Below are positions 6,000 through 43,556 of a stretch of DNA of 64,000 bases, piece after piece. The notes under the pieces are model-generated. The model searched no databases. It worked only from the letters and a program-made list of their open reading frames with translations, and was not told where the DNA came from. A program made the translations under genes and the position numbers. The stretch is from positions 124,001 through 188,000 of the IMG/VR virus record IMGVR_UViG_3300025012_000028; one strand, written 5' to 3'. How positions within the stretch are numbered: position 1 is the first letter of the stretch; each line of letters starts with the position of its first letter.

Positions 6000-6008
6000 T
6001 AGTTTCTC

Positions 6009-6335
6009 CTAATTTTTATTCTTGCTCCAAAATATATCTGCACTCCGCATTGCAGCTTCAATCCTTGCCCTACCAATAGGGTTTGCAGAATGGATATTCC
6101 ATTTGATGGGATCTAGTGTTTGATGATATGCGCGTGATTCGATGTATGCTGCTACATCATAACCAGTCCCACATTTTTCATCACCTAGATCATGATCAAA
6201 ATCTATTTCAGACACAACACCAGTTGAAATATATTCGATGGCCTGTTTAGCTGTCGTGCATCCATACCACCCAACCGGCACATGGCGATCTGGTGTATTG
6301 GGATCGTGTATTTGATCATCTAACCACAGTTTCAT
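6009..6335 (-). CDS. cyclic-phosphate processing receiver-domain protein
   Basis: MKLWLDD..R, DFDHDLG...GYD and IHSANP.G motifs. Confidence 0.8.
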   Translation of the reverse strand: MKLWLDDQIHDPNTPDRHVPVGWYGCTTAKQAIEYISTGVVSEIDFDHDLGDEKCGTGYDVAAYIESRAYHQTLDPIKWNIHSANPIGRARIEAAMRSADIFWSKNKN

Positions 6336-6776
6336 TTTATCTCCTTTTAACATAAACCAGTGGAAGGAAAACCAACAACCACCACCACGAATAAGGAATT
6401 GCTCCCAGATTTTTCATGATGATGAAGAACACAAACGGACCTCCACCAATCCAATTATATGTTGTTTTCATTTATCCTCTCCGCAATCACAAATATCATA
6501 AGAACGTCCACAACCATCGCAGAACATGTCAGGATCGACACCAATTATTTTCACCTGTCCTGATTTATAATCGGCATGAAGATTGTCCCACGGGTGGTTG
6601 TAAGTTTCCCACTCGTCCTCATATACATCCTGATCCCAATCATACGAATCAAACCACCCTTCTTCTTCAATATCGTAGTGGTCAATTGATTCTTCGCTCA
6701 ACCTATCGTTGGTTATTTTACAGGATTCCACAAGTATATCTAAGAGAGTTTTACAAGATTCCATATCTTCCTCCTT

Positions 6777-12262: not shown

Positions 12263-13486
12263 TTAGTTCTTTCCCTCGTTGAGAATTTCTTTGTACTTGT
12301 GAGCATAAACGTTCTCGACAAAGTTGATAGTGGCATCGTTCCCTCGCTTGAGGATATGTTTGGGAACATTCACATCAGCTTCCTTGAAAGTTCTTTCCAG
12401 ACGATTGATGATACTGAACTGATCGGCATCGAAAGGATAATCACAATCACATGCCCTCACGAAATCCCAAGCATAATATTTGACACGTTTGAAAAACCTA
12501 ATCAGCTTGACAGGTTTCATTTTGGTCAGGTTGTGGATCATGTGGTTGTTCGCCACAACATTGATCAGTTTATTCTCATGCTTCGTGAACCTCATGAAGT
12601 TGAGGTACGGAGTCAGAATCTTGGCGCTCTCGTGTTCATGACCGTAGTGGTGTCGCCCGTTCCGGTAATCCTCAGACTGAGCAGTAACCGCCTTACCGAC
12701 ATCATGGAACAGAACCGCAAGGAAAACCTGATACGAGTAACCTTTCTCCGCGCAGAGGTCGATACTTTTCATTACATGCTCAAATGCCGTATCGTTGACG
12801 TGGTGGGTATGTTCCGGTCCCGCATAGAAATTGGTCAGATCAGCAAGAGGTTTAAAATGATACTTCAGTGCATCAATTTCATGAAGAAATTTGAAGAACA
12901 TAGAAGGATATTTTGAATCCTCGTATACTTTCTTCAGTTCAGCACATACCCTATCAGTAGGAATGTTTACTAGTTTTTCGACGTTCTGTTTCATAAGATC
13001 CATAGTTTCCACGTCACATTTCAAACAGAAACGAGAAATGAACCTTGCGCCTCTGTAAATGCGAAGTGGATCTTCCACAAATGCGACCGGATTTACACAA
13101 CGAAGGATTTTATTTTTAACGTCCTCCGCGCCGTTGAATGGATCTACAATTTCCCCAGACAGGTAATGTTGTGCAATGCTATTGATGGTAAAATCTCTCC
13201 TACCAAGATCAACTTCAATCTGAACACCAGAATGAACTTCAAAGTCTTGATATTTTTCACCAACACATTTTTCAGAACGAGTCAAAGCAATCTCAGATCC
13301 ATCGGTATTGAGATACACCGGAAAACAATCCCCGACCTTGTTAAGAGTAGGAAAGAACTGTTCAAATGATTCTTGAGATGCTTGGACAGTGTAATCTACA
13401 TCTTTAGGTTCAACCCCCATGATAGCATCACGGACACAACCACCAACTTTATAAAGATGAAATTTTTCAGAAATGGTATCGAGCAT
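12263..13486 (-). CDS. cca: CCA-adding tRNA nucleotidyltransferase with HD domain
   Basis: VGGCVRD, DVD, DLGRRDFTINSIA, EDPLRIYRGARF and LFHDVGK motifs; start MLDTISE after AGGAGG. Confidence 0.9.
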   Translation of the reverse strand: MLDTISEKFHLYKVGGCVRDAIMGVEPKDVDYTVQASQESFEQFFPTLNKVGDCFPVYLNTDGSEIALTRSEKCVGEKYQDFEVHSGVQIEVDLGRRDFTINSIAQHYLSGEIVDPFNGAEDVKNKILRCVNPVAFVEDPLRIYRGARFISRFCLKCDVETMDLMKQNVEKLVNIPTDRVCAELKKVYEDSKYPSMFFKFLHEIDALKYHFKPLADLTNFYAGPEHTHHVNDTAFEHVMKSIDLCAEKGYSYQVFLAVLFHDVGKAVTAQSEDYRNGRHHYGHEHESAKILTPYLNFMRFTKHENKLINVVANNHMIHNLTKMKPVKLIRFFKRVKYYAWDFVRACDCDYPFDADQFSIINRLERTFKEADVNVPKHILKRGNDATINFVENVYAHKYKEILNEGKN

Positions 13487-13521
13487 ATTCCCTCCTAAAT
13501 TGAAATTCCCAACTGCCAAAG

Positions 13522-13550
13522 ATTGTAGCACAATTGGGAATTAAAGTCAA
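13522..13550 (-). promoter_or_regulatory. sigma70-type promoter overlapped by a hairpin
   Basis: TTGACT-17-TACAAT; AATTCCCAA...TTGGGAATT inverted repeat at 13504-13542. Confidence 0.7.
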
Positions 13551-13554
13551 TAGT

Positions 13555-13854
13555 TTATTTTGAATTATTTGTCTGGATGTATTTGGCTCTGAAAAAGTAA
13601 GGGACGGAAATCACTGGATATATTTCTCTATCAAACAGATTTGTGAACACAACATAATTCAATTTGTTTTTGTTACATGGCTCACATGCAACACAGAAAT
13701 TATCCTCACCAATCCCATTTCCCAGATCAACCGGGATGATATGGTCCAAACTCGGTTTCCCGACAATTGGTTTCCGGCAATAGAGACAAATCCCATTTTG
13801 TTCTTGGAATTTCTTTTCCCTCATTTCAATTCTAAATTGGTGCGACTCCCTCAT
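13555..13854 (-). CDS. small HNH endonuclease
   Basis: CLYC...SLDHIIP...G.G.DN..ACEPCNKNK. Confidence 0.85.
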   Translation of the reverse strand: MRESHQFRIEMREKKFQEQNGICLYCRKPIVGKPSLDHIIPVDLGNGIGEDNFCVACEPCNKNKLNYVVFTNLFDREIYPVISVPYFFRAKYIQTNNSK

Positions 13855-14167: not shown

Positions 14168-15220
14168 TTATTTTGTCATAAATTTTACAAAAGCTTCACC
14201 GTCTTCAGACCTATCTTCAGAAAAAGTTAACTTTTTAGGAAACATATCTCTAACATGTTGAAGTAATTCAGACATAATGCCTTGTCTTCTATATTCGGGT
14301 TTGGTATAAATATTTGCTACATGTCCTATTCCTCGTTTATTACTTAATACCTGAATTACCGCTATATGCTGTTCATTTTCATATTTTAAAAATCTATAAC
14401 TTCCATATTTATCTTTTAATACTTTAACTGTAGGTGACAAAATTTCTTCTTTTTCAACACCAACATAAGGATGTTCTTTATTTAGGAAAGAAACTAAAGT
14501 TTCATTACTTCTAATACTCTCAAATATATTATTACTTTCCCCATCAAACATTCCTCGGTTGTCCACATGCTTAATCTGGAACGGGAAAAATGCGACCCAA
14601 TGAGTTCTTCCGTTAGGATGCTTCTTAAACACTCCGTCATATCCTAAAGCTTGATATATTTTCCAATTGAATTCTTTAGGATGATCTGAATAAAAATCAT
14701 TCGCCAAAGAGAATAGACCTTTCACGATATTATCATTCTCAATAACATGAATTTCCGTTGCGGCTCTGATTACTTTTTCTTTGCCTTCCCATTCAACATC
14801 ACCATAATTGGAAAGTGCGTCTGCTAATTCGGGCGAACGTTTAATAAAGAAATTGATTTTATCATATTTCACATTTCCAATCTTATCAGCATCAAGTGGT
14901 TTCTTAATACAAAGATAGACCGGATGAACTGTAGGATTGTCAGACCCGCCTAATTTAGAACCTTTGGTGGATTCCGTCTTTCCTGTATATCCTTCCGCTT
15001 CTGTAATGTCGGTTGTAAAATAAAATCCACTACCAAGCTGATCAGCACCCTGATTAGTAAACTCATATTTAAATTCTTCTATGGCAGTTCCAGATCCATG
15101 ATAGCAAACTAATGGTTGTTTATTTTCGTCAACGACCTTGGAACCCCTAAACCATTTCCTGAACTTAGGGTTCTTGGTGACATCTAATGCTTCAGATAGA
15201 AATTGTTTAAAAGATATCAT
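14168..15220 (-). CDS. leader-tagged putative internal head protein: ART-PolyVal-like ADP-ribosyltransferase plus C-terminal GNAT
   Basis: MISFKQFLSE leader; YHGS...GSGFYFT...PVYL.IKKP...LGYDGV...VAF...QIK; GNAT motif A IYTKPEYRRQGIMSELL. Confidence 0.75.
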   Translation of the reverse strand: MISFKQFLSEALDVTKNPKFRKWFRGSKVVDENKQPLVCYHGSGTAIEEFKYEFTNQGADQLGSGFYFTTDITEAEGYTGKTESTKGSKLGGSDNPTVHPVYLCIKKPLDADKIGNVKYDKINFFIKRSPELADALSNYGDVEWEGKEKVIRAATEIHVIENDNIVKGLFSLANDFYSDHPKEFNWKIYQALGYDGVFKKHPNGRTHWVAFFPFQIKHVDNRGMFDGESNNIFESIRSNETLVSFLNKEHPYVGVEKEEILSPTVKVLKDKYGSYRFLKYENEQHIAVIQVLSNKRGIGHVANIYTKPEYRRQGIMSELLQHVRDMFPKKLTFSEDRSEDGEAFVKFMTK

Positions 15221-16287
15221 TCGAACTCTCCAAAAACATTATCGACAAGATACTTCAGCGTTTTCCAAATACCAGACGAAGTAATACTTTCAAATGCCTT
15301 TTCATCTCTATGTGGATTATTTCTCATTTCTTTGTAGCTAGTCCACACATCTTCGAAGCGTATAAAGAACTCTTGTGGGTTTTCATATACATAATTGTAT
15401 GTCGCACCAGTGAACACTCTCTGTTCCCAAACACTATTATCTTCATAGATATTGAAACTAAGTTTGACATATTTATTTCTTCTATCTTCGTTATAACTTG
15501 CGACTTTTATTTCTTTCATCTCAGGAAGTTGTTCCACTTCTTTATAATAATGCCAATCTCTATCGACATGTCTAAAAGATAAATCTAATGCCGCCTGACA
15601 TCTAGTTTCTGCCCATCGTTCCGATGACCAACCTGATGGTAATTTGTTTCTCATGTGGTTGAGTACATTGACTATTAGATCAATCTTAGGGAAATTGAAA
15701 ATTTTCAATGGAATGTTATAATGGTCACACCAAGATTCGAATACATCAAAATTCATTGGATCATCAAATTGGTTAAACACTTCCACAGCTCCACCTAAAA
15801 TTTCAGGATAAACCGCAACAGCAATTTTACTATACTTGTGTGCGGCATCATAATGTTTATCTATTATAAAATAGAATTTAATTCCTTTGTTTACGTAGGA
15901 GTTCCAGTGTGCTGGTGTGCTTTCTGTAATACACCATTTAGTTCCTGCACCATACTTGCGACTGGCCTCATGACTTCTAATATGATAAACATAAAACTCT
16001 TCATTCTCAAATATTTTGTCTGCATCTTTCGTTTTTACAATTTTTGTTTTGCGCTCAACTTCCTTATCTCTTTTCTTATCCACAAACTGATAGAATGACC
16101 AAAACCCTTTTGGTATCCAATAAGAAATATCTTTTTCACTTCCAGATAATTGATTTTTTGCTTTTAATTCTTTGAACCATTCGATATATTTATCAATATC
16201 TTTATCATTGTAATCCGGATTTCTCCAAACTCGTTTGGCATCGGCAAAGGATTCTACCAACAATATATAGGATTTGAAAGAAATCAT
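15217..16287 (-). CDS. leader-tagged putative internal head protein, PcfJ-like domain
   Basis: MISFKSYILLVE leader; EASRKYGAGTKWCIT...W.SY...FYFI motif. Confidence 0.6.
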   Translation of the reverse strand: MISFKSYILLVESFADAKRVWRNPDYNDKDIDKYIEWFKELKAKNQLSGSEKDISYWIPKGFWSFYQFVDKKRDKEVERKTKIVKTKDADKIFENEEFYVYHIRSHEASRKYGAGTKWCITESTPAHWNSYVNKGIKFYFIIDKHYDAAHKYSKIAVAVYPEILGGAVEVFNQFDDPMNFDVFESWCDHYNIPLKIFNFPKIDLIVNVLNHMRNKLPSGWSSERWAETRCQAALDLSFRHVDRDWHYYKEVEQLPEMKEIKVASYNEDRRNKYVKLSFNIYEDNSVWEQRVFTGATYNYVYENPQEFFIRFEDVWTSYKEMRNNPHRDEKAFESITSSGIWKTLKYLVDNVFGEFE

Positions 16288-16499
16288 TTTATTTCCTTGA
16301 TATTATATGAATCGGGTGTGCGCCTAAAATAACTCTCCACCGATCTTCCTAGTTTCTTTGATAACCCAAAACACATTTTCTTGAATGCTTCATCCTGACT
16401 TGCCGCTTCAGTAGACAGATAATGATTTTCTTTATGGTAGCAGAATGTTCCTTTGAATTTGGATGCTTCCGAAAGATATTGTTTAAATCTAATCATCAC
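16284..16499 (-). CDS. small leader-tagged putative internal head protein
   Basis: MMIRFKQYLSE leader; 71 aa, basic, similar in size to T4 IPI. Confidence 0.65.
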   Translation of the reverse strand: MMIRFKQYLSEASKFKGTFCYHKENHYLSTEAASQDEAFKKMCFGLSKKLGRSVESYFRRTPDSYNIKEIK

Positions 16500-17418
16500 T
16501 TCTCACCTTAGCATCTTTCCATTTGTTAGACAAGAATTCAATTACTTCTTTTGTCGATTTGAGTTTATATCGATGCATTCTCTTCACAAGCTTCTCGACA
16601 CTCATAGATTTAATTTCATCACTTTTATTATTGTGTATATCATTATTTAGAGTTGCTAAAGAGTCACCACGATAGTTATGATAAACTATTTCATATCTTA
16701 AATCATCTGCTTCTGAAGAAAGATCTTTGACTTCATCTTTATCGAATAACTCGACATAGAGATTTATTTTTTCTGGTCTACCACCCATACCACTTTTCAC
16801 TTTTTTCTTATTCAGAAGCATGAATGATTCAAAGTCTTCATAAAAATAAACTGGAATGCTATAAACGTTTGAATAATCAAGTATCTTTTTGTACATTCTA
16901 TTTCTTTCCCATGCATTGTGTTGATCATTCAGAGAAAGTTTTTCAAACGCTTTATAGTCGGAATTAATGAGAAGGTAATTCTTATCTACCATAATATGAA
17001 TTTCTTTGATATATTCATGTGCATTTTCGATTATGGATGTGGGAGAAAAGATTCTGTCCTCATTCTCTTGGTTACGCAACCGCATATCAAGAGATACACT
17101 CGGTCTTCTGAAAGATGGCCCCCAATAATCTACACTCTTACCGGAAAGATTATGAGAAAGTTTCGTACCATCCAACACAAGATTGACCTGTTCGGAATTA
17201 CCAAAGCTTCTAGCATAACCACCATATTTAATTCTACTGGTAGAAAAATAAAATGGTTTAAACTTTTTCCCTTTGTACATCTGATCTGAAGCAGTTCCTA
17301 AATCAGATGCTAATCTAAACTTATCATCTTTAAGAATTGATACTAGTTTATGAACACCAGTATGATGATAGAGAATGGGTGATACACCTTCTATAAGAAA
17401 CTCTTTGAAAGATATCAT
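16489..17418 (-). CDS. leader-tagged putative internal head protein, ART-fold candidate
   Basis: MISFKEFLIE leader; LYHHT...IL, FSTSR and ENEDR (H / STS / ExE arrangement). Confidence 0.55.
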   Translation of the reverse strand: MISFKEFLIEGVSPILYHHTGVHKLVSILKDDKFRLASDLGTASDQMYKGKKFKPFYFSTSRIKYGGYARSFGNSEQVNLVLDGTKLSHNLSGKSVDYWGPSFRRPSVSLDMRLRNQENEDRIFSPTSIIENAHEYIKEIHIMVDKNYLLINSDYKAFEKLSLNDQHNAWERNRMYKKILDYSNVYSIPVYFYEDFESFMLLNKKKVKSGMGGRPEKINLYVELFDKDEVKDLSSEADDLRYEIVYHNYRGDSLATLNNDIHNNKSDEIKSMSVEKLVKRMHRYKLKSTKEVIEFLSNKWKDAKVRSDD

Positions 17419-17693
17419 TTTGGGATGTCCTGTACTTTTATTATTTTTGTAATTTTAGCATATTTTGGATGTACATAATCCAACCTATCAAATAAAACAT
17501 GAGCACGTTTAAGTGTCATTACTTCTGGTTCATCTGTTATATGAATATCATAACCACCCCAACCTATAAATTGTTTAATCCCTTTACGTTTTCCTACATA
17601 AATTACATATTCTTCTCTACCACTATTTCCAATTTTAGTGAGATAATCATCTAATGCTTTATCTTCCTTTATGAATTCTTTAAATGAAATCAT
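17415..17693 (-). CDS. small leader-tagged putative internal head protein
   Basis: MISFKEFIKE leader; ATGA overlaps at both ends. Confidence 0.7.
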   Translation of the reverse strand: MISFKEFIKEDKALDDYLTKIGNSGREEYVIYVGKRKGIKQFIGWGGYDIHITDEPEVMTLKRAHVLFDRLDYVHPKYAKITKIIKVQDIPK

Positions 17694-18508
17694 TTTTTCT
17701 TCCTTATCTTAACTAAAGAATCATCAAACAGAACATAATTCAATTCATTACTACTATCCCCAAAGTATTTAGTTCCGGCGATACCAATAGAAGCAAAATA
17801 CAAAGATGCTTCTTTGGCTGAACCAAATATATGTTTAGCTAGTCCATATATTTGTTCACCACTCTGGTTCCAAAATCTATATGATTCATTTTTTAAAACA
17901 TCATTCAGTGGGATTGACTTTACTTCATCCCCCATATCTTGAAGAATTCCTTTAGGATGAGCCTTCTCAAATAAAGGAATGAGTTTCTTTTTTATTGGTT
18001 CGCTCTGTTCTTTGAGAGATTTATTCCAATGAAGAAATTCATCTTCTGAAGGAATGATATCTACATGATACAATTTACCTTTTGACTTCTTAACTTCTCT
18101 TTGTTGATTGATATTCTGTGCTATTTCATCCATCTTTTTATAATAACCCAAACCATTATCTTTAGTCCACTCTTCTCCATTCAGAGCATCATTCAACATA
18201 CCAGATATAAACTTCTTTGCTTTTTTCAGACCCATAGTATAAATTAAATCTGCTGCTTTTTGTTCAGGTGTTCCAGCTTTAGTTTTAATTCCATTTATTT
18301 CGTAGAACCAAGGAACCGGAGCATCACCAACCTTTTTACCTATATACCATTCAGCAACTTCCTTCTTAGAACTGAAATATAAACCCCACCCATATGCAGC
18401 AGCACCCTCACCACTACCGATATGTTGAAGTTTGAACTCATCAAAATCGTAGGGTGATCCATGATAAGCAATCGGAGATTCAATTAAAAACTTTTTGAAT
18501 GATATCAC
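17690..18508 (-). CDS. leader-tagged putative internal head protein, ART-PolyVal-like domain
   Basis: GTG start MISFKKFLIE; AYHGSP.DFDEF...GSGEGAAAYGWGLYFS...Y, GKLY.V, GIAG.KY and NYVLFDD motifs. Confidence 0.75.
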   Translation of the reverse strand: MISFKKFLIESPIAYHGSPYDFDEFKLQHIGSGEGAAAYGWGLYFSSKKEVAEWYIGKKVGDAPVPWFYEINGIKTKAGTPEQKAADLIYTMGLKKAKKFISGMLNDALNGEEWTKDNGLGYYKKMDEIAQNINQQREVKKSKGKLYHVDIIPSEDEFLHWNKSLKEQSEPIKKKLIPLFEKAHPKGILQDMGDEVKSIPLNDVLKNESYRFWNQSGEQIYGLAKHIFGSAKEASLYFASIGIAGTKYFGDSSNELNYVLFDDSLVKIRKKK

Positions 18509-20090
18509 TCACCCTCCCCATCTGTTTTCCACTGCATAACATCTTTAAAGATAAGATATTCATTATCACTGAACCACCCACTTCTCAACCTAAGATGTTT
18601 GACCTCATTGGCGATTGTGGTTTCAACTGGTTCTTGGTGATATTTATCCTTATCCCCTCCTACAAAACCTTTCTTTTTGAACTTGGTGTTGTCGTGGTAA
18701 ATTTTATCTAAAAGCGCCAACATCTGCTCTGCGCCCTGTGAATATTTTTTCTCGTGCTCATGTCCTTCCCAAGATGCTTTCTCGTCCTCTAGGTAATCCT
18801 CAAGCGTTTTACCGGCATTTGTTTTCATCTGTACATATGACGCTTCAATATATGCTCGATACCACTCTTGATCTGAAAGAGGTTCCCATTTAACCCCATA
18901 AATTTCGGCAAGAGTTGTGATATCAGATTCATAAGATTTGATCAGTTTGATATTATCTAATTTTCTTTTTTCATGTCTTGCGTCTACTTCTTTCGATTCC
19001 ATCTCTTTACGAGAAAATTCAGGAACAAAATCGGTTCTGTCCTTCAGAGTTTTCCAATCTTCACCAATCTCTTTGGCTATATCAATAAATTTAGTTTCGG
19101 CATCCCACGAAAAGTTATAAGGTTCCTTCTCCGAATAGATGTTAACTCTGATTCTATGGTGATCATACTTTTTAGAATATTTGTGGGGCTTCTCACCCAG
19201 ATTAAGATTATCCATATAGGATTGAGGGAAAGAAAATTCTGTATCAATCCTTCTACCTTTCTTAGTCCATGACTTTTCTTTGCTAAATTCTTTGATTTTA
19301 TCTCCAATCTGCATGGCGATCATAGCCGCAAGCTTCCTATGTAACTTAGCTTCATCTTTTGATGTTCCTAAACCACCAGCAGAAAGATATTCGGATTTGG
19401 GATTTAGTTCATAAATGTCTACGATCTTGAAGAACTTCTTATTGAAGAACACGGCTTGCCACGGTTCCCTATCATTGATGATTGCCGACTTTTGGTTTCT
19501 GGCTTCATCAATAAGTCCATCATAGCCCAAGGATTTCCAGAACTGCATTTGTTCTTCGCCAGTTTTTAATTCAGGTTTCACATCATCAAAATATCTATTC
19601 TTCTGAAAATAGAATTCTTCTGGATTTGAAACCTGTGACATTTTAAATAAAGCTTGTTTGTCGTTACATTTATATCTTTTTTAGCTGCTTTGAGATAGTA
19701 ATCATTCAATCCCAACGCTCTAAGAATCCTATCCATGATATGATTCTGCATGGTCTGAAGGTGGAGAATGTTAGGTGAACCAACTAACTCAATAACTCTG
19801 AGGAATCTAGCTCCACGACCATACCAAACGTCTGCGGGATGCTGGCATAAATAAGATAAAGGATAAAGGTAAATTCCTTCTGGGTCTGAGTGGGAGGAGT
19901 CTCGTTGGTGTGGTGATGAAAAATTCTTATTTAAAATATCGGTGTCGGGATTCATTGTAAAATTACACCAATATTGATTTTCAGATGATGTTTTTAATAT
20001 TTTATTCCATTTTTTATAAAATAAATGGAATTGCTTGGGATAGATATCATGAAAATGAATCTCAGTTAAAAAGCTTTTGAAAGAAATCAT
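18505..20090 (-). pseudogene. leader-tagged ART-like gene split by a -1 frameshift (ORFs 19578-20090 and 18505-19641)
   Basis: Leader MISFKSFLTE and PEGIYLYP lie in the 5' ORF; LGYDGLID...EPWQAVFFN lies in the 3' ORF; the second frame opens exactly at the A6 run 19677-19682. Confidence 0.7.
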
Positions 20091-20115
20091 TATTATGCCT
20101 CTGTGTGTTTAAAAT

Positions 20116-20123
20116 TATTTATA
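20116..20123 (-). promoter_or_regulatory. T4-type late promoter TATAAATA
   Basis: Exact consensus about 25 nt upstream of the MISFK start at 20090. Confidence 0.75.
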
Positions 20124-20149
20124 AAATCTATATTGAGGATAAACCAATC

Positions 20150-21079
20150 ATGAAAGATAAAACATATTATATCATTTACGAAACTACAAATTTATTAAAT
20201 GGTAAAAAATATAGGGGAGCGCATAAAACTAAAAATATAAATGATGGGTATATGGGGAGTGGTGTGATAATTAATCAAGCAATTTTGAAATATGGAAAAG
20301 AAAATTTTGAAACAATTCATTTAGCATATGCGTTATCATATGATGATCTTTTTTGGTTAGAAGAATATGTTTTCGTGACTAAAGAATGGGTTGATTTGCC
20401 ACATTCTTATAATTTAAGAGTGGGTGGATGTGGCAAATATTACGAAGAACAAACTAAACAAACATGTTTAGACAAATATGGGGTTGAATTCTATTCCCAA
20501 ACTGAAGAATGTAAACTTAAGAAAATTAACACATGTTTAGAAAAATATGGAGTTGAATTCTATGTTCAAACCGAAGATTTTAAGTTGATAATGAAAAATA
20601 AATACAGCGAAGATAACCCACATCCCTTAACTGGCAGGCCAGTTTTACCAGAAACAAAAGAAAAACTCAGAATCGCAAATTTAGGAAAAGTCACGTCAGA
20701 AGAAACCAAAGCAAAAATAAGCGTAAAATCTTCTGGTAAAAACAACCCTAATTATGGTATTAAACATACAAATGAGACTAAAGAAAAATGTAGCAAAGTA
20801 AATCAAAAATATGAATATAAACTAATTTCACCTAATGGTGAAATTTTCACAACTTTATCATTATTTAATTTTTGTGCCGCAAATGAACTGGATAGAAATG
20901 CATTTAGAAATATTCTTAGGGTTGGTAGAACGACCGTAGAATGTCCCAAAAATGTTACACAATGTAGTAAGTTAAGATTTAATACTACTGGATGGTCGAT
21001 AGAAGAAATGGAGATTATCCCAACTTCACCCAAAGCAAAGTATCCAAGAGAGAAATCATCAATTCCACTCCGTTGGTAA
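20150..21079 (+). mobile_element. GIY-YIG (Seg-like) homing endonuclease with NUMOD3 repeats
   Basis: YIIYETTNLLNGKKYRGAH...DGYMGSG...AILKYGKENF...E...YNL.VGG; ETKEKL / ETKAKIS / G.NNPNYG repeats; likely ATG at 20150 after GAGG. Confidence 0.85.
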
Positions 21080-21652
21080 ATTCCAAACTTCTATTTTATC
21101 TTTTGGTTTAACTACTTTCGAATTGGTGATCAGTTTCATATTGAATAGAACAACCATTCTTTCTCCCCACCCAAATGCGTTATCAACAATTGAATAGTCC
21201 ACACCATGTTGCACTAAGAACCGTCTCAAATTGTTACTGTCGGATGGTTTGATTGCTTCATAGTTGACCATTATGTTTATGAAGATGACTGCGCTAATTC
21301 TATCTTTGTAATTATATTTTGATGCTGCCACTAAAACTTCTTTCCGTTTAGATTTGATACAGTAATATTTCACAAAATCATCGATGGCATGAAAAGGAAT
21401 TGAGGCTTCTTTAGCATCCACACCCTTTTGAATTGTGACAAGATATAACTTCCTACTTCCCTTTTTATATTTCTCTACCACATTATATGAAGTAGTCAGA
21501 TATAAACCGGGAGCAAATTGGAATCTACCTTTCTTCTGAATATAATTTTCATCGGGACCATAATCTAAATTGCCCCCATGCCAGAAAGAAAGAGTATTGG
21601 GTTCTGTAGATGGGGAAATGAGATCTTCGAAGATGGTTTTATATGATATCAT
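21059..21652 (-). CDS. leader-tagged putative internal head protein, ART-like domain
   Basis: MISYKTIFE leader; FWHGG...GRFQFAPGLYLTT...KLYLV...GVDYSIV...VVLFN. Confidence 0.65.
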   Translation of the reverse strand: MISYKTIFEDLISPSTEPNTLSFWHGGNLDYGPDENYIQKKGRFQFAPGLYLTTSYNVVEKYKKGSRKLYLVTIQKGVDAKEASIPFHAIDDFVKYYCIKSKRKEVLVAASKYNYKDRISAVIFINIMVNYEAIKPSDSNNLRRFLVQHGVDYSIVDNAFGWGERMVVLFNMKLITNSKVVKPKDKIEVWNLPTEWN

Positions 21653-22236
21653 TCGGTTTCCTCGTTACAAAACTTTACCCAATCTTCAACACTGTTCAAA
21701 TGTTCTTTAAGCTCATATAAATCATTTATCACAAAAACCCATTGTCGCATACCGATACAATAACAGAGATGTCTACAGAGATATTGTGCTCTATTATAAC
21801 TATCAAGAGCCATATGAGATTTACCATAATCTTTGAGTCTCTGATATAATGCACGTCTGAAATCATTTTCAGTGGGATATTTTTCTAAGAACTTCTCTCT
21901 GTTCTCACTCCTGTTGATTCTATAATCATAATTATTGGAAATGTTTTCTTCCATCTCACGTTCAAACCCATAACTGTCCGTGAGATACTTCAGAACTTTA
22001 TTGACTTTATCCTTACAATATTCATAACCATGTGTATCCCACATGATTCTTTGAAATGCTCGGTTAATAATATCCCCTGCGTGTTCGACTACTGGATTAA
22101 GGACACCACCACCCATCAACATCTGAACCTTTAACATTAAATCTTCGGGTTCACCACGTTGATCTAAAGCTATCTGTATGCTTTTGGCTTTAAAAGAATC
22201 ATCTGATTCAGACAAATATTCCCTAAAAGAAATCAC
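21649..22236 (-). CDS. leader-tagged putative internal head protein, unknown helical domain
   Basis: GTG start MISFREYLSE; 4-nt overlaps on both sides. Confidence 0.7.
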   Translation of the reverse strand: MISFREYLSESDDSFKAKSIQIALDQRGEPEDLMLKVQMLMGGGVLNPVVEHAGDIINRAFQRIMWDTHGYEYCKDKVNKVLKYLTDSYGFEREMEENISNNYDYRINRSENREKFLEKYPTENDFRRALYQRLKDYGKSHMALDSYNRAQYLCRHLCYCIGMRQWVFVINDLYELKEHLNSVEDWVKFCNEETE

Positions 22237-22913
22237 GCTGCCTCCAAATAACCCGGTTTAGTATACTTAGCCAGAGCCGGATTCTGATCATCTACAATAA
22301 TTTCATCTAATACATTCAATTCGTCTGGATCGTGCCACGGATCGATACACACTATCATACCATCAGAAGGACGCTCCATGAAATTCCCAACGTGAATATC
22401 CAGCCTACCGAATTCTCTTCCCTCTTCCATCTTTAACATTGCGTTTCTGAGACTCGGACCTTGAGGAAACATATCTTTATTCTTCTCTGCTCTTCTACCA
22501 ACCCGACCCACGAACCATTCATCCTGTACATCCATAATTACTTGATCAACGAATGTCTCATTACCTTCCGACATAGGTTCAAGCTTTTCTAATTTGACCA
22601 ACTTAATCAATTCGTCTTTACGGGAACGTCTATGGAAAGCAGGAATGGTTTTCATTCGCCCCAACACTCTAGGAAAATGGGGATTGTTTCTGTTCTCGGA
22701 TTTGAGAATATATCTAAGGAAGGATTCATAAGACTGATCTAAAGTCCAAACCTTGATCACATAGTTCTTACTTGGTATTTCAAAAACCTGTGAGTGAGCA
22801 CCACTACCCACTTCTCTCCACTTAAGTTTCTTGAAAAGATTTTTGAGGGAATTGGCACCATAGAATTTCTTCACATTGTATAACTCTAATAAAAATTGTT
22901 TGAAAGAAATCAT
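22233..22913 (-). CDS. leader-tagged protein-kinase-like enzyme
   Basis: MISFKQFLLE leader; VGSGAHSQVF glycine loop, VIK lysine, LEKL, DIHVGNFM catalytic loop, CIDP metal-binding motif. Confidence 0.8.
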   Translation of the reverse strand: MISFKQFLLELYNVKKFYGANSLKNLFKKLKWREVGSGAHSQVFEIPSKNYVIKVWTLDQSYESFLRYILKSENRNNPHFPRVLGRMKTIPAFHRRSRKDELIKLVKLEKLEPMSEGNETFVDQVIMDVQDEWFVGRVGRRAEKNKDMFPQGPSLRNAMLKMEEGREFGRLDIHVGNFMERPSDGMIVCIDPWHDPDELNVLDEIIVDDQNPALAKYTKPGYLEAA

Positions 22914-22940: not shown

Positions 22941-22948
22941 TATTTATA
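22941..22948 (-). promoter_or_regulatory. T4-type late promoter TATAAATA
   Basis: Exact consensus about 27 nt upstream of the first array gene. Confidence 0.8.
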
Positions 22949-22986: not shown

Positions 22987-23562
22987 CTATTTAGCGTTAT
23001 ATACTACACAACTTCGGGTTTCTTGAGGGTAGACCGGACAAGTTTTATCTGCTTTCAAACATGTATAACAAAGAGATTTCAGTTCGTACTCAACAAAATT
23101 TTTAGCGATGTTTTTCAGTTCAAACAAACCTTTTGTATTGTCTACATAATAATCATAGTTGTAATTAGCAACTCGATCATCCGATACATTTCCTAAAACT
23201 CTTTCACCAAATCTCTCTACCAACATTGTCTTTGCGTCTGGATACCAAGATTTGAATTTATCTATCTCTTCTGGTTCCCGAATATGAACAAAAATATGGT
23301 GTGTTTTTGGAAGTACATCTATAAACTCCACTAGATAACTTATAGGACCATTATAGAATTCAGTCGAAAGTTTCTTTAGTTCAGATAAAAACAATCTACC
23401 ATGTTCATCTTTAACAGAATCCCATCCCAATAACTCTGCGGCTTCTTTAACTCTATCTACTGATGAAAGGTTATTGACCATACCAAAATCAAATTCTTCC
23501 TGAACATATTCTATGAATTGATCTTTCCCAGACCCGCCCTGTCCATTTATGATGATGATCAT
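22987..23562 (-). CDS. deoxynucleoside monophosphate kinase-like P-loop protein
   Basis: INGQGGSGKD Walker A, GWD..KD..GR.FL, HIREPEEI and YDYYVDN motifs; next to dUTPase. Confidence 0.7.
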   Translation of the reverse strand: MIIIINGQGGSGKDQFIEYVQEEFDFGMVNNLSSVDRVKEAAELLGWDSVKDEHGRLFLSELKKLSTEFYNGPISYLVEFIDVLPKTHHIFVHIREPEEIDKFKSWYPDAKTMLVERFGERVLGNVSDDRVANYNYDYYVDNTKGLFELKNIAKNFVEYELKSLCYTCLKADKTCPVYPQETRSCVVYNAK

Positions 23563-24006
23563 TTACACCCCCGAATGACCATGACCACCAGCACCACGTT
23601 CCGATTCGGAGAGTTCGTCCGATTCGATAAATTTAATTGTAGGTTTGGGGAGAATAATCATCTGAGCCATTCTATCACCAACCTGATATTCTTTGCCCCT
23701 GTGAGCGTCAAATTTGGGCTTGAAGCGCACTGTCACGTTTCCTCGATACCCAGAGTCGATCACACCAGAAGTTGAGAAAATAAGGTCATATTTAGAGACA
23801 GAACTTCTAGGCCAGATCTTACCAAAGTAACCTTCGGGAATTTCAAATGCTAGATCGGTTGTATATTCGATATAATCTGAAGTCTCATTAATATCAGCAG
23901 CGACCAAATCAAAACATGCATCATCATGTTTTGCGTACTCAGGAATTACAGCTTTATCAGACAACCTTTTGATCTTCACCACCAACGCTTTTTTGCAATT
24001 ACACAT
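23563..24006 (-). CDS. dut: trimeric dUTPase
   Basis: ACFDL, PRSS, GVIDSGYRG, GDRMAQ and RGAGGHGHSG motifs. Confidence 0.92.
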   Translation of the reverse strand: MCNCKKALVVKIKRLSDKAVIPEYAKHDDACFDLVAADINETSDYIEYTTDLAFEIPEGYFGKIWPRSSVSKYDLIFSTSGVIDSGYRGNVTVRFKPKFDAHRGKEYQVGDRMAQMIILPKPTIKFIESDELSESERGAGGHGHSGV

Positions 24007-40892: not shown

Positions 40893-42629
40893 TTAATTAA
40901 CCATATACCCAAATCCAGATTCATCTTTTAAAAAGTTCCTTGCGTCCAATTGTTCCCAACCGTCGAACCCGTAGTACGGCTGACTCGTTTTTATTTCAAA
41001 TCCAATTCCATTTTCCAATTCAAAATCGGAATCAGTTAATAACAACATCACAGTTTTGAAATTCGTATATACTTTCATTGGTGCCTGATTCCATTTATTA
41101 TCTACATCATTAATAAATGCCTCATCTTCTAGGTCGTTATATGTTTCCCCTCCAATTGTTATATCAAAACTTTTCAGCCCACCGTCTAAAGCAGACATCA
41201 TTTCGTTATATCTGCCACCTTCAATACCTCTCTCCGCTGCCCATCTACATTGAGTATAAAGATCATCTCCCTCATCTTCCAAAAACTGGAACATATCATC
41301 TTCCCAATTTTCTTCATCCTCGTCCGGATATTCTTTTCTAATATACTCTTCAACTTTCTTTTCGTCCAACATTTCATAACATTCTCTTATAGTATCATCA
41401 CTCACTTCTATATCTGGGTCCGAATCTTGGTCTACTATCCATTTGGTTGTATCGTCACCATAATTTTCAACTAGGTCTTCTAAATCTCTGGCTTCATATA
41501 TGACTGCAAATTCTTTCTTTTCATCCCACTCTAAAGAATGAAGATCTTTCGAAATCCAGAGTTCATTCATTCTCTGCATAAATGAATCGGTTTTTCCTAC
41601 TTTCTTATAATAATCCATCAAACCCATCAACTCGGGTCGTTGTTCAAATAAATCTTCTTTAAATTCATCTGACAAATCTTCGGTACTAAAATCCGAATCT
41701 TGTCCATAAGAGGAACGTTCTATCCCTTTGATATAATAACTTTCGGTTCCCTTGGTTGATGTTACTTCTTTATGGAGCAGCAAATCCAGAATGTACTTGT
41801 GGTACTTCTCAACGGGTTTGGTATTTTGTTTGCCCTTCATTTGATATAAGATATGATCATCACTACCCATCTCAAAAGTCAGATGGGGTTCCCATAACCA
41901 CGTAGACGGTTCAGATTTGCGTTTGTTGAGGTATCGGAGGGAAAGTAAGGTACTACCATGACTTCCAGTTCCGCAGTGTCCCATTGCCCTACTCTCGTTG
42001 CTACAGTAGTTGGTGTTGAGGTCTACCCAATACCAACCGTTCCCATACTCGATTATAGGAAAACATCTTTTGTCTGGATAACCTTCTTCATGATCCAATG
42101 GTTGTTTGATATACTGAACTGTTCCATCTAACTCTGATGCCCATTCCTTTTCAATCTTTTCCATATCGGCAAACACTTCTTCGGGGAATTTACCGGTAGG
42201 ATTATAATCATCAATCTCTTTTAAGTGAAGATCCAGAAAGTGTTTATATTGAGTCAATGTTTTTCTAGGTAGAAAATCATTTTGCATTTTACTATCTAAT
42301 ATGTCGGGTCTATCCGCCAGATTAAATTTTTTACATTCGCTTTGTAAAAGTTTTTTGTAATATTGTTTTATGTTCTGTTCAGCAACTTTATCATCTAGAG
42401 TTAAATTGTCTAGTGTCCATGCCATATATATCTGCATTAATTTATTATACCAAATAATTCTAAAATTCTTTTTTAAATACTCTGGCGATTGAAGAACATA
42501 AGATCTATAATATGTGTCGATTACCGGAGTAACTTTACCCAATTCCAAAACTTTGGTAAACATCTGCGAATAATCATATGCCTCAAGCAGCAGAGGAGCA
42601 TGTAAAAAGGTTTTAAAAGAAATCATCAT
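40893..42629 (-). CDS. leader-tagged putative internal head protein, PcfJ-like domain plus acidic C-terminus
   Basis: MMISFKTFLHAPLLLE leader; ESRAMGHCG...LLSLR...PHLTFE...QMKGKQN.KP..KY motif. Confidence 0.7.
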   Translation of the reverse strand: MMISFKTFLHAPLLLEAYDYSQMFTKVLELGKVTPVIDTYYRSYVLQSPEYLKKNFRIIWYNKLMQIYMAWTLDNLTLDDKVAEQNIKQYYKKLLQSECKKFNLADRPDILDSKMQNDFLPRKTLTQYKHFLDLHLKEIDDYNPTGKFPEEVFADMEKIEKEWASELDGTVQYIKQPLDHEEGYPDKRCFPIIEYGNGWYWVDLNTNYCSNESRAMGHCGTGSHGSTLLSLRYLNKRKSEPSTWLWEPHLTFEMGSDDHILYQMKGKQNTKPVEKYHKYILDLLLHKEVTSTKGTESYYIKGIERSSYGQDSDFSTEDLSDEFKEDLFEQRPELMGLMDYYKKVGKTDSFMQRMNELWISKDLHSLEWDEKKEFAVIYEARDLEDLVENYGDDTTKWIVDQDSDPDIEVSDDTIRECYEMLDEKKVEEYIRKEYPDEDEENWEDDMFQFLEDEGDDLYTQCRWAAERGIEGGRYNEMMSALDGGLKSFDITIGGETYNDLEDEAFINDVDNKWNQAPMKVYTNFKTVMLLLTDSDFELENGIGFEIKTSQPYYGFDGWEQLDARNFLKDESGFGYMVN

Positions 42630-43010
42630 TTACCTCAACGTCCCAAGTTTAATAAAATCACCCGAATCTAACAGTTCGTGTACTCCGGTTCCATATTTCA
42701 TCCCAGAATGTTTAACTGCATATTGACTTCCAGATTCCTCTTCACCTATAGTTTTTGTAAGATACATAGGGGAATCAAATTTAATATTCCAACTATAACC
42801 AGTCACCTGATAAACTTTACCAGTCTTATTTGATTTGAATCTATCACCCACTCCCAAGCGCCATCCTTGGTATGCCTCAATCTTTTCCATCATGTCTTTC
42901 ACACCAAGCTTAATATCATCCCTCAATTTCTTATGAAACTCCCTTTCGGGTCTGGTGATAAGAGGAATGGGTTCTTTATCTTCGGTGATAAATTCTTTGA
43001 ATGAAATCAT
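42630..43010 (-). CDS. leader-tagged putative internal head protein
   Basis: MISFKEFITE leader. Confidence 0.7.
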   Translation of the reverse strand: MISFKEFITEDKEPIPLITRPEREFHKKLRDDIKLGVKDMMEKIEAYQGWRLGVGDRFKSNKTGKVYQVTGYSWNIKFDSPMYLTKTIGEEESGSQYAVKHSGMKYGTGVHELLDSGDFIKLGTLR

Positions 43011-43036
43011 GGAGTTATCCTATATGAATTTTTTAT

Positions 43037-43065
43037 TTGACAATTACGGATTTCGGAGTTAAAAT
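43037..43065 (+). promoter_or_regulatory. antisense sigma70 promoter
   Basis: TTGACA-17-TAAAAT on the plus strand, with no plus-strand ORF downstream. Confidence 0.6.
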
Positions 43066-43124
43066 AATCTTGTCCGTTAGGACATAGACATCTACTGCCT
43101 TTTATTATAGGACAATGGACAATC

Positions 43125-43556
43125 CTAGAAATCATCATCTTCATCGGGAGGAATGACTTCTACAACATCATATTTCTCACCAATATATTTATTTGAATAT
43201 AAAAAGTCCTTCATATCTTCTACATCGACCCAACCTAATTTAAGATTGGTGGAAGTCAGAGTTATAATGCAGCTATACTTTTTAAATTTCTTCATTTCTC
43301 CAACAAAGTTAATTTCCAAACACAGAGGTTTTTCTAATTCAAATTTCCGCGCAACATCTGTATGTAGAATGGTATCCCCGAAACCATAAACAATTTCACC
43401 ATCCACAACAACTACTCTCATGATATCCCAACTCTTAACAACCTCTATGGATTTGATTTCATCAAAGGTGGGATTTTCGAATATAAGTTGTTCCTCACGC
43501 TTATACATGTAGGAATCTTTATAATTTTCGGATAAAAATTTTTTGAATGATATCAA
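43125..43556 (-). CDS. leader-tagged putative internal head protein
   Basis: TTG start MISFKKFLSE. Confidence 0.65.
   Translation of the reverse strand: MISFKKFLSENYKDSYMYKREEQLIFENPTFDEIKSIEVVKSWDIMRVVVVDGEIVYGFGDTILHTDVARKFELEKPLCLEINFVGEMKKFKKYSCIITLTSTNLKLGWVDVEDMKDFLYSNKYIGEKYDVVEVIPPDEDDDF

What the first reader, a model, noticed from the sequence alone, without database searches (positions are those of the whole stretch)
14168..21652. Up to five distinct ADP-ribosyltransferase-fold proteins in one late operon
Seen: H-G-x...G-x-Y-(F/L)...G-x-D-G...V-x-F-type motifs in 14168-15220, 17690-18508, 21059-21652 and (partially) the split gene 18505-20090, plus an H / STS / ExE pattern in 16489-17418. 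Known: T4 packages one ART (Alt) that modifies host RNA polymerase, and ART-PolyVal domains occur in conflict proteins. Inference: a diversified panel hitting different host targets (RNAP, defence proteins, nucleic acids or NAD+).
Basis: inference. Interest (0 to 1): 0.75.

Follow-up and report, generated by a model that had tools for sequence, protein, structure and literature searches.

The report
Capsid-targeted ADP-ribosyltransferase array in phage
An uncultured T4-like groundwater phage encodes four intact and one frameshifted ADP-ribosyltransferase-fold protein side by side, each starting with the short tag that T4 uses to load proteins into its head, so they are probably injected with the DNA to modify host molecules at once.

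Summary
The window lies in a 214.5-kb T4-like phage contig from groundwater.

Evidence for an ADP-ribosyltransferase (ART) fold in each of the five genes:
- 14168-15220: Pfam ART-PolyVal (3e-19), fused to a GNAT acetyltransferase.
- 17690-18508: ART-PolyVal, just above the cut-off.
- 21059-21652: a family in which 45 of 58 members hit DUF3990 and 44 of 58 hit ART-PolyVal.
- 16489-17418: a confident model (pLDDT 90.5) whose best PDB matches are Tpt1 and DarT (Z 10.4 and 8.7). The H, STS and ExE residues are family-conserved.
- Split gene: evidence is by structure only and weaker.

The split gene changes frame inside a run of six A at 19677-19682. Natural intact homologues of 513-555 aa exist.

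All eleven minus-strand genes in 14168-22913, and 19 ORFs genome-wide, begin with M-I-S-F-K-x-F-L-x-E. This matches position for position the capsid targeting sequence of T4 internal proteins. The genome has a gp21-type prohead protease. TATAAATA late-promoter motifs precede both gene units.

The best reading is a set of head-packaged, ejected effector enzymes. It extends the known T4 Alt and polyvalent-protein theme. Targets and catalysis are untested.

The parts
22941..22948 (-). TATAAATA, a T4-type late-promoter-like motif 27 nt upstream of the first leader gene
   Evidence: The same motif lies 29-62 nt upstream of the gp21-like protease, scaffold-like and 536-aa head-region genes.
22233..22913 (-). 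Leader protein of 226 aa. It has kinase-like motifs by eye only; function unknown.
   Evidence: A homologue with a leader lies in the relative contig L009 at 14500-15171.
21649..22236 (-). Leader protein of 195 aa, no family found
21059..21652 (-). ART-fold protein of 197 aa, DUF3990/ART-PolyVal-like, with H25-G-G, Y51 and a GWGE motif
   Evidence: Homologue family A1: 45 of 58 members hit DUF3990 and 44 of 58 hit ART-PolyVal. The window protein itself is below Pfam reporting.
20105..21079 (+). Homing-endonuclease-like gene (NUMOD3; GIY-YIG-like N-terminus by eye) that interrupts the array on the opposite strand
20116..20123 (-). Second TATAAATA late-promoter-like motif, 25 nt upstream of the split gene
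19578..20090 (-). N-terminal piece (170 aa ORF) of the split gene. It carries the leader and the HSDPxGxYxYP / WYGRGA motifs.
19677..19682 (-). Run of six A on the coding strand where the reading frame changes. The frames on either side each match the intact homologues.
   Evidence: The run length differs by one letter in a contig from another sample.
18505..19641 (-). C-terminal piece (378 aa ORF) of the split gene. It holds the GYDG and INDREPWQ motifs, a middle alpha/beta domain and a helical tail.
17690..18508 (-). ART-PolyVal protein of 272 aa with a GTG start. The Pfam match spans residues 14-156.
17415..17693 (-). Leader protein of 92 aa, unknown
16816..17397 (-). DarT/DUF2971/Tpt1-like ART-fold domain (residues 8-201) of the 309-aa protein at 16489-17418. 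It has H18, S59-T-S-R62 and E118-x-E120-D-R122. Residues 214-309 form a helical C-terminal domain.
   Evidence: AF2 pLDDT 90.5. PDB matches are and AFDB matches.
16284..16496 (-). Leader protein of 70 aa, unknown. A homologue lies in L009 at 14280-14498.
15217..16287 (-). Leader protein of 356 aa. It matches only PHROGs of unknown function.
14558..15130 (-). ART-PolyVal domain (residues 31-221) of the 350-aa protein at 14168-15220
   Evidence: Pfam 3.2e-19, 70.5 bits
14237..14419 (-). GNAT acetyltransferase domain (residues 268-328) fused to the ART-PolyVal domain
   Evidence: Pfam Acetyltransf_1 2.7e-07; PHROG acetyltransferase
40893..43556 (-). Second cluster of three leader-bearing ORFs in the window (577, 126 and 143 aa), no family found

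Best explanation
The region is part of a set of head-packaged, ejected effector proteins of a T4-like phage.

Proposed sequence of events:
1. Each gene is transcribed late, from TATAAATA-type promoters.
2. Each protein starts with a roughly 10-residue capsid targeting sequence, M-I-S-F-K-x-F-L-x-E. This is the counterpart of T4 IPII/IPIII MKTYQEFIAE and IPI MKTFKEF.
3. By analogy with T4, the tag binds the scaffolding core of the prohead.
4. The gp21-type prohead protease cuts it off after the Glu.
5. The mature enzymes then sit inside the head and are ejected with the DNA. They act before any phage gene is expressed.

Five of the eleven genes in this stretch encode ADP-ribosyltransferase-fold domains from at least three lineages:
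- two ART-PolyVal proteins, one of them fused to a GNAT;
- one DUF3990/ART-PolyVal-like protein;
- one DarT/DUF2971-like protein with an H / STS / ExE set;
- one ART-PolyVal-like-by-structure protein, frameshifted in this contig.

The inferred activity is use of host NAD+ to ADP-ribosylate different host macromolecules. The GNAT would use acetyl-CoA. The DarT/Tpt1-like protein may act on nucleic acid.

Shown: the ORFs, the leaders, the family and fold assignments, the protease gene, the promoter motifs, and conserved synteny in a relative.

Inferred: packaging, cleavage, ejection, catalysis and targets.
For: Leader:
- 19 ORFs genome-wide start M-I-[S/R/T/P]-F-K. Position 4 is aromatic in 19 of 19. 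Position 7 is F or Y in 18 of 19. Position 8 is L or I in 18 of 19. Position 10 is E in 16 of 19.
- Synonymous codon variation shows selection on the peptide.
- T4 IPII/IPIII/IPI N-termini were read from NC_000866.
- The literature places CTS targeting at residues 4 and 7 and processing at residues 8 and 10, and describes the IPs as diverse proteins that share only the CTS (PMC9026906; PMC3012670).
- The leader is disordered or low-confidence in both AF2 models.

Protease and promoters:
- A Peptidase_S77 (gp21) homologue lies at genome 67984-68367, about 41% identical to cyanophage gp21.
- TATAAATA precedes both units and also the head genes.

ART assignments.

Relatives:
- Contig L009 has the same array with leaders, including an intact version of the split gene.
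- Homologues in other phages carry their own CTS-like leaders ending in L-x-E.

Prior work: ARTs are often virion-packaged in myoviruses (PMC9503650).
Against: - There is no virion proteome, no culture and no known host. Packaging and cleavage rest on analogy.
- Three leaders place the Glu at position 9, 12 or 15 rather than 10.
- The window's 21059-21652 protein itself gets no Pfam hit.
- The split-gene family has no sequence-level link to ARTs. Its structural matches are weak (Z 4.6-6.6) and it lacks the canonical beta-1 His.
- The 16489 family gets no Pfam ART hit in any of 54 members.
- ART folds also occur in NADases, NAD+ phosphorylases and RNA 2'-phosphotransferases, so the chemistry is not fixed by fold.
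Confidence: 0.68

Rival explanations
1. The proteins are late-expressed cytoplasmic enzymes that are not packaged. The shared N-terminus would serve another purpose, such as a translation-initiation or stability element, or a recombination handle for gene shuffling.
For: - Packaging is not shown.
- Genes overlap by ATGA/GTGA, so 5' coding sequence could matter for translational coupling.
- The shared 30 nt could promote cassette exchange.
Against: - Conservation is at the amino-acid level, with synonymous variation.
- The pattern matches the experimentally mapped T4 CTS position by position.
- Homologues in other phages carry different but CTS-like leaders ending in L-x-E.
- A gp21-type protease is present.
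Confidence: 0.12
2. Some of the ART-fold domains do not ADP-ribosylate macromolecules. They might be NAD+ glycohydrolases or phosphorylases (RES/MbcT-like) that deplete or reshape NAD+ pools. They might be Tpt1/KptA-like RNA 2'-phosphotransferases used in RNA repair, or non-catalytic binding modules.
For: - The N-domain of P0191 matches NatT, MbcT and RES as well as PARP and DT, and it lacks the canonical His.
- The best Z for the 16489 model is to the NAD+ lobe of yeast Tpt1.
- Its homologue in Vibrio phage 6E35.1a lies next to rnlB.
Against: - No member of the 16489 family hits the Pfam Tpt1 family.
- Only the NAD+ lobe is matched, and the matches to DarT are longer.
- An ExE motif at the start of the strand at residues 120-125 is typical of transferases.
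- ART-PolyVal relatives include AcrIF11, recalled from memory as a protein ADP-ribosyltransferase.
Confidence: 0.25
3. The split gene is only an assembly or sequencing artefact, and the phage really has an intact gene.
For: - The break is in a homopolymer run.
- A contig from a third sample has the run one letter longer and is otherwise identical over 1,471 bases.
- Intact homologues exist.
Against: - Contigs from the runs of two samples, at depth 24 and 31, carry exactly the window's form. They may be the source data of this contig, so they are not fully independent.
- The 358-aa C-piece protein was called on 7 contigs.
- The variant contig has only depth 5.
- The data fit a real length polymorphism in the population at least as well.
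Confidence: 0.25
4. The motif matches are chance, and the proteins are unrelated to ADP-ribosyltransferases.
For: For three of the five window proteins no Pfam hit is reported.
Against: - Two Pfam hits are above the gathering score.
- Family-level hits for the 21059 family.
- The top 33 structure matches of the 16489 model are all ART-superfamily.
- ART-PolyVal, DUF3990 and RES matches to the P0191 N-domain appear in three libraries.
Confidence: 0.03

Closest known systems
T4 Alt (head-packaged ADP-ribosyltransferase)
   Same: A phage ART made late, incorporated into the prohead core, trimmed by gp21 and ejected with the DNA to modify host proteins (PMC9026906; PMC9503650). It has the same inferred logic and the same type of protease.
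   Different: - Alt belongs to the R-S-E (Alt/VIP2) clade. None of the five here shows the beta-1 Arg; they have His, or no His at all.
- T4 packages one ART. This phage has four intact and one broken side by side, plus a sixth ART-like domain elsewhere in the genome.
- The leaders resemble the IP-type CTS rather than Alt's 7-residue propeptide.
T4 internal proteins IPI/IPII/IPIII and their capsid targeting sequence
   Same: - A ten-residue N-terminal tag with an aromatic residue at 4, Phe at 7, an aliphatic residue at 8 and Glu at 10.
- Otherwise unrelated proteins that share only the tag.
- Clustered, variable loci.
   Different: - T4 IPs are small basic proteins (about 8-20 kDa), and IPI is a restriction inhibitor. 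Here the tagged proteins are mostly enzymes of 200-800 aa, including ARTs and GNATs.
- There are 19 of them.
ART-PolyVal domain of polyvalent proteins (Pfam PF18760; Iyer et al. 2017, PMC5512222)
   Same: - Two proteins match the model above its cut-off.
- The split-gene family also occurs inside proteins of 1,100-2,555 aa. Four of six such proteins scanned carry NUDIX, GNAT or nucleotidyltransferase domains.
- The predicted role, virion-delivered early effectors, is the same.
   Different: Here the domains are separate small genes, each with its own targeting tag. They are not fused into one giant polypeptide, so this is an unbundled version of the polyvalent idea.
DarT (DUF4433), DUF2971 and the NAD+ lobe of Tpt1/KptA
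   Same: The 16489-17418 model matches them at Z 8.2-10.4 over 112-152 residues. AFDB neighbours are named DarT, DUF4433 and DUF2971. The His-x-Thr at beta-1 resembles what I recall of DarT.
   Different: - There is no sequence-level match.
- It has an STS-R and ExE-D-R set not recalled for DarT.
- It has no antitoxin partner.
- It has an extra helical C-terminal domain.
- It lacks the RNA-binding lobe of Tpt1.
AcrIF11 (6KYF) and cyanophage A4 pre-ejectosome protein (9K3A chain B)
   Same: These are the two best Foldseek PDB matches of the split-gene family's N-domain (probability 0.89-0.97). One is a phage protein whose Pfam family is named an ADP-ribosyltransferase. The other is a virion ejection protein.
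   Different: The scores are weak (Z 4.6 and 6.6) and there is no sequence similarity. The family has its own invariant H-x-D...Y...E-P-x-Q set.

Membership tests
Pfam ART-PolyVal (PF18760) | Score at or above the curated gathering cut-off (31.2 bits) | tested here: met
   14168-15220 scores 70.5 bits and 17690-18508 scores 33.2 bits. The Atlas feature search for 17690 also points to ART-PolyVal clusters.
Pfam ART-PolyVal / DUF3990 (for 21059-21652) | Sequence match to the family models | tested here: inconclusive
   The window protein itself has no hit at E<=1. Of 58 homologues at 43-63% identity, 45 hit DUF3990 (best 1.4e-08) and 44 hit ART-PolyVal (best 3.7e-05). Membership is inferred through the family.
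Pfam ART-PolyVal / DUF3990 (for the split gene family) | Sequence match to the family models | tested here: not met
   No Pfam hit for four intact homologues. hhalign against the 21059 family found nothing. Only structural similarity was found.
ADP-ribosyltransferase superfamily fold | Split beta-sheet NAD+-binding core recognised by structure comparison | tested here: met
   16489-17418: pLDDT 90.5, and the top 33 VIA rows are all ART-superfamily, with Z up to 10.4. P0191 N-domain: consistent but weak, with Z 4.6-6.6 and TM by hit up to 0.65 to an ART-PolyVal cluster.
ADP-ribosyltransferase superfamily | Catalytic residues lining the NAD+ pocket (H-Y-E or R-S-E) and NAD+ turnover | not testable with these tools
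   Conserved H/Y/E or H/STS/ExE sets exist in the alignments. No residue-level superposition or assay was possible. The split-gene family lacks the beta-1 His.
DarT (PF14487 / DUF4433) | Sequence membership, and pairing with a DarG-type antitoxin | tested here: not met
   No Pfam DarT hit in 54 family members. The genome has no Macro domain, though a NADAR gene lies far away at genome 43490-43924.
Tpt1/KptA RNA 2'-phosphotransferase | Two-lobed enzyme with an N-terminal RNA-binding lobe; match to the Pfam Tpt1 family | tested here: not met
   Only the NAD+ lobe (chain residues 103-230 of 7yw4) aligns. No Pfam hit.
T4 Alt/ModA/ModB (R-S-E clade) | Arg in beta-1, STS, ExE | tested here: not met
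   16489-17418 has STS and ExE, but His rather than Arg at beta-1. No Pfam hit to the R-S-E families appeared in the scans at E<=1 and E<=0.1.
T4-type internal (CTS-bearing) head proteins | N-terminal 10-residue tag with targeting residues 4 and 7 and processing residues 8 and 10 (aliphatic, Glu) | tested here: met
   compared with PMC9026906. 16 of 19 leaders have Glu at position 10.
T4-type internal (CTS-bearing) head proteins | A gp21-type prohead protease in the same genome, and late expression | tested here: met
   Peptidase_S77 scores 60.2 bits against a cut-off of 27. TATAAATA lies upstream of both units and of the head genes. Promoter activity itself was not tested.
T4-type internal (CTS-bearing) head proteins | Physical presence in the virion, cleavage of the tag, and ejection | not testable with these tools
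   The phage is uncultured, from a groundwater metagenome. No proteome is available.

The most novel reading that the evidence does not exclude
The MISFK leader defines a complete injected proteome of about 19 proteins. It is an unbundled polyvalent protein.

Within it, the two DarT/DUF2971-like enzymes (16489-17418 and the 801-aa protein at genome 86165-88570) would be delivered with the genome. They would ADP-ribosylate host nucleic acid, or defence nucleic acids, within seconds of infection. The phage's NADAR enzyme would erase collateral marks on phage DNA.

The A-run in the split gene would act as an on/off switch that varies the effector set within the phage population.
Probability: 0.12. 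Interest if true: 0.85.

Novelty: new variant of a known kind. Interest (0 to 1): 0.62.

Why it matters
**What is already known.** Head-packaged ARTs are known from T4 Alt. Comparative genomics predicts them to be common in myoviruses.

**What is new here.**
- A simple, readable sequence tag marks which proteins a T4-like phage probably loads into its head.
- One phage uses that tag on four intact, one broken and one further ART-fold enzyme from at least three lineages, plus GNATs and others.
- That turns the question of what this phage injects into a list that virion proteomics can check.

**Two widespread families worth characterising.**
- The H/STS/ExE DarT-like family has no Pfam model.
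- The HxD-Y-EPxQ family has 317 clusters at 50% identity. It has no Pfam model and also occurs inside polyvalent proteins.
- Both are candidates for new host-takeover or counter-defence activities.

Tried and rejected
- **Near-identical DNA search in GenBank phages:** no match.
- **The search for related loci with the ART-GNAT protein in viral contigs:** nothing confirmed.
- **PDB sequence searches** with 16489, 21059, 22233 and profiles A1, A3 and A5: only noise.
- **hhalign** of the 16489 family and the split-gene family against the 21059 family: no relation. These are not close paralogues.
- **NCBIfam:** no useful hits.
- **tblastn** of 21059 and P0191 against GenBank phages: no match.
- **Sigma-70 promoter and terminator scans:** at chance level.
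- **tRNA scan** to explain the GC-rich stretch: none found. That stretch is a beta-helix tail-fibre-like gene.
- **Tpt1 membership for 16489-17418:** considered and rejected. Only the NAD+ lobe matches and there is no Pfam hit.
- **The split gene:** I folded the natural intact homologue P0191 instead.


Full report
**Context**

The window is bases 124001-188000 of a single 214,553-bp viral contig. It has 36.5% GC and CheckV estimates about 90% completeness. The sequencing runs that hold it are groundwater metagenomes. The contig encodes a gp21-type prohead protease (Pfam Peptidase_S77, 60.2 bits against a cut-off of 27). That protease is about 41% identical to gp21 of T4-like cyanophages. The phage is therefore a distant, uncultured member of the T4-like myoviruses. 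Nothing near-identical exists in GenBank phages.

**The observation**

The motif pattern it described is present, as set out in the observation check.

The region 14168-22913 holds eleven tightly packed minus-strand genes, many with ATGA or GTGA start/stop overlaps. It is not one operon. A plus-strand gene at 20105-21079 (NUMOD3 motif, with a GIY-YIG-like N-terminus by eye) splits it into 22913->21059 and 20090->14168.

Each unit is preceded by TATAAATA, at 22941-22948 and 20116-20123. The same octamer lies 29-62 nt upstream of the protease, scaffold-like and 536-aa head-region genes, and upstream of two other leader genes elsewhere in the genome. TATAAATA is the T4 late-promoter consensus by established knowledge. 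"Late" is therefore plausible, though promoter activity is untested. Sigma-70-like and terminator-like sites are at chance level.

Every one of the eleven genes begins with the same leader. Genome-wide, 19 ORFs begin M-I-[S/R/T/P]-F-K-x-[F/Y]-[L/I]-x-E.

- Outside the leader the proteins are mutually unrelated, except the two ART-PolyVal proteins.
- Codons vary synonymously, so the peptide is what is conserved.
- I read the T4 internal proteins from NC_000866. IPII and IPIII start MKTYQEFIAE-A and IPI starts MKTFKEF.
- The review of T4 head assembly states that the first 10 residues of IPIII are the capsid targeting sequence. Targeting depends on residues 4 and 7. Processing by gp21 depends on residues 8 and 10 (PMC9026906).
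- The same literature describes the internal proteins as diverse, sharing only the CTS (PMC3012670).
- The leader here has F or Y at position 4 (19 of 19), F or Y at 7 (18 of 19), L or I at 8 (18 of 19) and E at 10 (16 of 19).
- In both AF2 models the leader is a low-confidence N-terminal appendage.

I therefore read the leader as this phage's CTS, and the 19 proteins as candidate head-packaged, ejected proteins. This is an inference by analogy. No proteome exists.

**The five ART candidates**

*1. 14168-15220 (350 aa).* Pfam ART-PolyVal at 3.2e-19 over residues 31-221, plus a GNAT domain over residues 268-328 (confirmed on the genome).

*2. 17690-18508 (272 aa).* ART-PolyVal at 33.2 bits against a cut-off of 31.2. 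The protein-language-model search agrees, with a score of 0.90 and 192 shared features to ART-PolyVal clusters.

*3. 21059-21652 (197 aa).*
- It has no Pfam hit itself.
- It belongs to a well-conserved family, with 134 proteins at E<=0.01.
- H25-G-G and Y51 are invariant, and the GWGE motif is part of the family consensus.
- 45 of 58 members hit DUF3990, 44 hit ART-PolyVal and 7 hit PARP.

*4. 16489-17418 (309 aa).*
- No Pfam hit appears in any of 54 family members, and there is no profile link to family 3.
- With the family alignment, AF2 gives pLDDT 90.5 and pTM 0.86.
- Foldseek's top 30 PDB matches are all ART-superfamily: DarT, Tpt1/KptA, pierisin and CC0527.
- VIA-align gives Z 10.4 to the NAD+ lobe of yeast Tpt1 (112 residues, rmsd 2.5).
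- It gives Z 8.2-8.7 to DarT over 141-152 residues of model residues 8-201.
- AFDB neighbours are named DUF2971, DarT and DUF4433.
The ExE sits at the start of the strand at residues 120-125.

*5. The split gene.*
- The 170-aa N piece carries the leader. The 378-aa C piece overlaps it in another frame.
- Intact natural homologues of 513-555 aa exist. P0191 is 56% identical to the C piece and has the same MISFK leader.
- An exhaustive profile search finds 317 cluster representatives. Some lie inside proteins of 1,100-2,555 aa. Four of six such proteins scanned carry NUDIX, GNAT or nucleotidyltransferase domains.
- No Pfam or profile link to ARTs exists.
- The AF2 model of P0191 has pLDDT 87.8.
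- Its N-domain (about residues 33-230) matches the following at Z 4.6-6.6: a cyanophage A4 pre-ejectosome protein, AcrIF11, NatT, ParT, MbcT, RES, PARP1/2 and diphtheria-toxin-like proteins.
- In AFDB it matches ART-PolyVal-like, DUF3990 and RES clusters.
- In the ESM Atlas it matches an ART-PolyVal cluster at TM 0.65 by hit over 151 residues.
- The fold call is consistent across libraries but individually weak.
- The family lacks the beta-1 His. It has its own invariant H62, D64, Y71, Y75, E203, P204 and Q206.

**A sixth ART-like domain**

One lies outside the window. The 801-aa leader protein at genome 86165-88570 has an N-terminal domain homologous to family 4 (hhalign probability 97.8%, E 7.8e-13).

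**The break in the split gene**

The reading frame changes inside a run of six A on the coding strand, at 19677-19682. The frame before the run and the frame after it each match the intact homologues up to that point. Contigs from three groundwater samples were laid on the stretch.
- Contigs from the runs of two samples, at depths 24 and 31, are identical to the window.
- One contig, at depth 5, has that run one letter longer and has no other difference over 1,471 bases.

This fits a length polymorphism of the run in the phage population, or a homopolymer error in one assembly. Raw reads would decide. I left the gene as it is and worked with its pieces and with natural intact homologues.

**Relatives**

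A 17-kb contig from another data set (L009) has the same arrangement downstream of the same conserved 165-aa gene, the homologue of window 22987-23562. All of the following carry CTS-like leaders:
- the intact P0191;
- a homologue of 16489-17418;
- a Pol-beta-type protein;
- a GP88-family protein;
- a 171-aa DarT-like protein (hhalign probability 98.4% to family 4);
- a homologue of the 70-aa protein;
- a homologue of the 226-aa protein.

Homologues in other phages carry lineage-specific leaders that end in L-x-E. One example is MKKFNEFAKE in Vibrio phage 6E35.1a. Families 3 and 5 have no match in 50,697 GenBank phage records.

**Mechanism**

The most likely mechanism is late synthesis and CTS-mediated incorporation into the prohead core. 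The gp21-type protease then removes the tag, and the enzymes are ejected with the DNA. They would then immediately modify host targets using NAD+, and acetyl-CoA for the GNATs.

The diversity of ART lineages argues for different targets. The DarT/Tpt1-like fold of family 4 makes a nucleic-acid target a reasonable guess. All of this is inferred.

The rivals are these:
- there is no packaging;
- the chemistry is NADase or phosphotransferase rather than transfer to macromolecules;
- the frameshift is an artefact.

Each is listed in the Rival explanations section with its refuting experiment.

**Comparison with what is known**

T4 Alt is the precedent for a packaged ART. Iyer et al. argued from genomic context that ARTs are frequently virion-packaged in myoviruses. 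They also found that ART domains are the commonest modifying enzymes in polyvalent proteins (PMC9503650; PMC5512222). In the passages I searched, that work does not mention CTS-type leaders as the packaging signal for ARTs.

The differences here are as follows:
- the separate-gene, tag-per-protein organisation;
- the number and diversity of ART-fold genes in one phage;
- two large families without a Pfam model;
- the run-length variation in one of them.

I rate this as a new variant of a known kind, of moderate to good interest.

Noticed in passing
window 43770-46772 (-): A 1000-aa protein with pectate-lyase-like beta-helix and phage tail-fibre repeat matches lies in a stretch of about 52% GC, in a genome of 36.5% GC. 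This suggests a recently acquired receptor-binding or depolymerase gene.
   Followed up: partly
window 20105-21079 (+): A NUMOD3 homing-endonuclease-like gene (GIY-YIG-like N-terminus by eye) sits on the opposite strand inside the leader-gene array. Its 5' end overlaps the TATAAATA of the downstream unit, and it lies next to the frameshifted gene. The relative contig L009 has no such insert.
   Followed up: partly
genome 43490-43924 (+), outside the window (locus L011): A NADAR-domain gene (E 4e-52). No Macro domain was found in the genome. NADAR enzymes remove ADP-ribose conjugates, so it may relate to the ART set or to host DarT-type defence.
   Followed up: no
genome 86165-88570 (-), outside the window (L007:3366-5771): An 801-aa leader protein. 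Its N-terminal domain is homologous to the 16489-17418 family (probability 97.8%). Its C-terminus weakly matches Lcl_C. It is preceded by TATAAATA.
   Followed up: partly
window 22233-22913 (-): The first gene of the array has protein-kinase-like motifs by eye: a Gly-rich loop GSGAHSQV, then VIKV, DIHVGNFM and IDP. Pfam, NCBIfam and PDB give no hit. A leader-bearing homologue exists in L009.
   Followed up: partly
window 40893-43556 (-), and genome 59011-59789, 82935-84760, 198126-199412: Further leader-bearing ORFs, including a small GNAT at genome 59011-59424. The ORF at 198126-199412 has a leader, MIRFKEFIAEA, nearly identical to T4 IPIII.
   Followed up: partly
window 12263-13531 (-) and 13555-13854 (-): A CCA-adding-enzyme-like nucleotidyltransferase with an HD domain, and a small HNH endonuclease, lie just downstream of the array. 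A dUTPase lies at 23563-24006.
   Followed up: no
genome 203418-203684 (-), outside the window (L002): A second, weak Peptidase_S77-like match (22.8 bits, below the cut-off) in a 140-aa frame.
   Followed up: no
L010 (Vibrio phage 6E35.1a, MW824377.1) 6001-6594: A cultured T4-like vibriophage has a 198-aa member of the 16489 family. It has its own CTS-like start, MKKFNEFAKE, and lies directly after rnlB. It is annotated as hypothetical. It could serve as an experimental entry point.
   Followed up: partly
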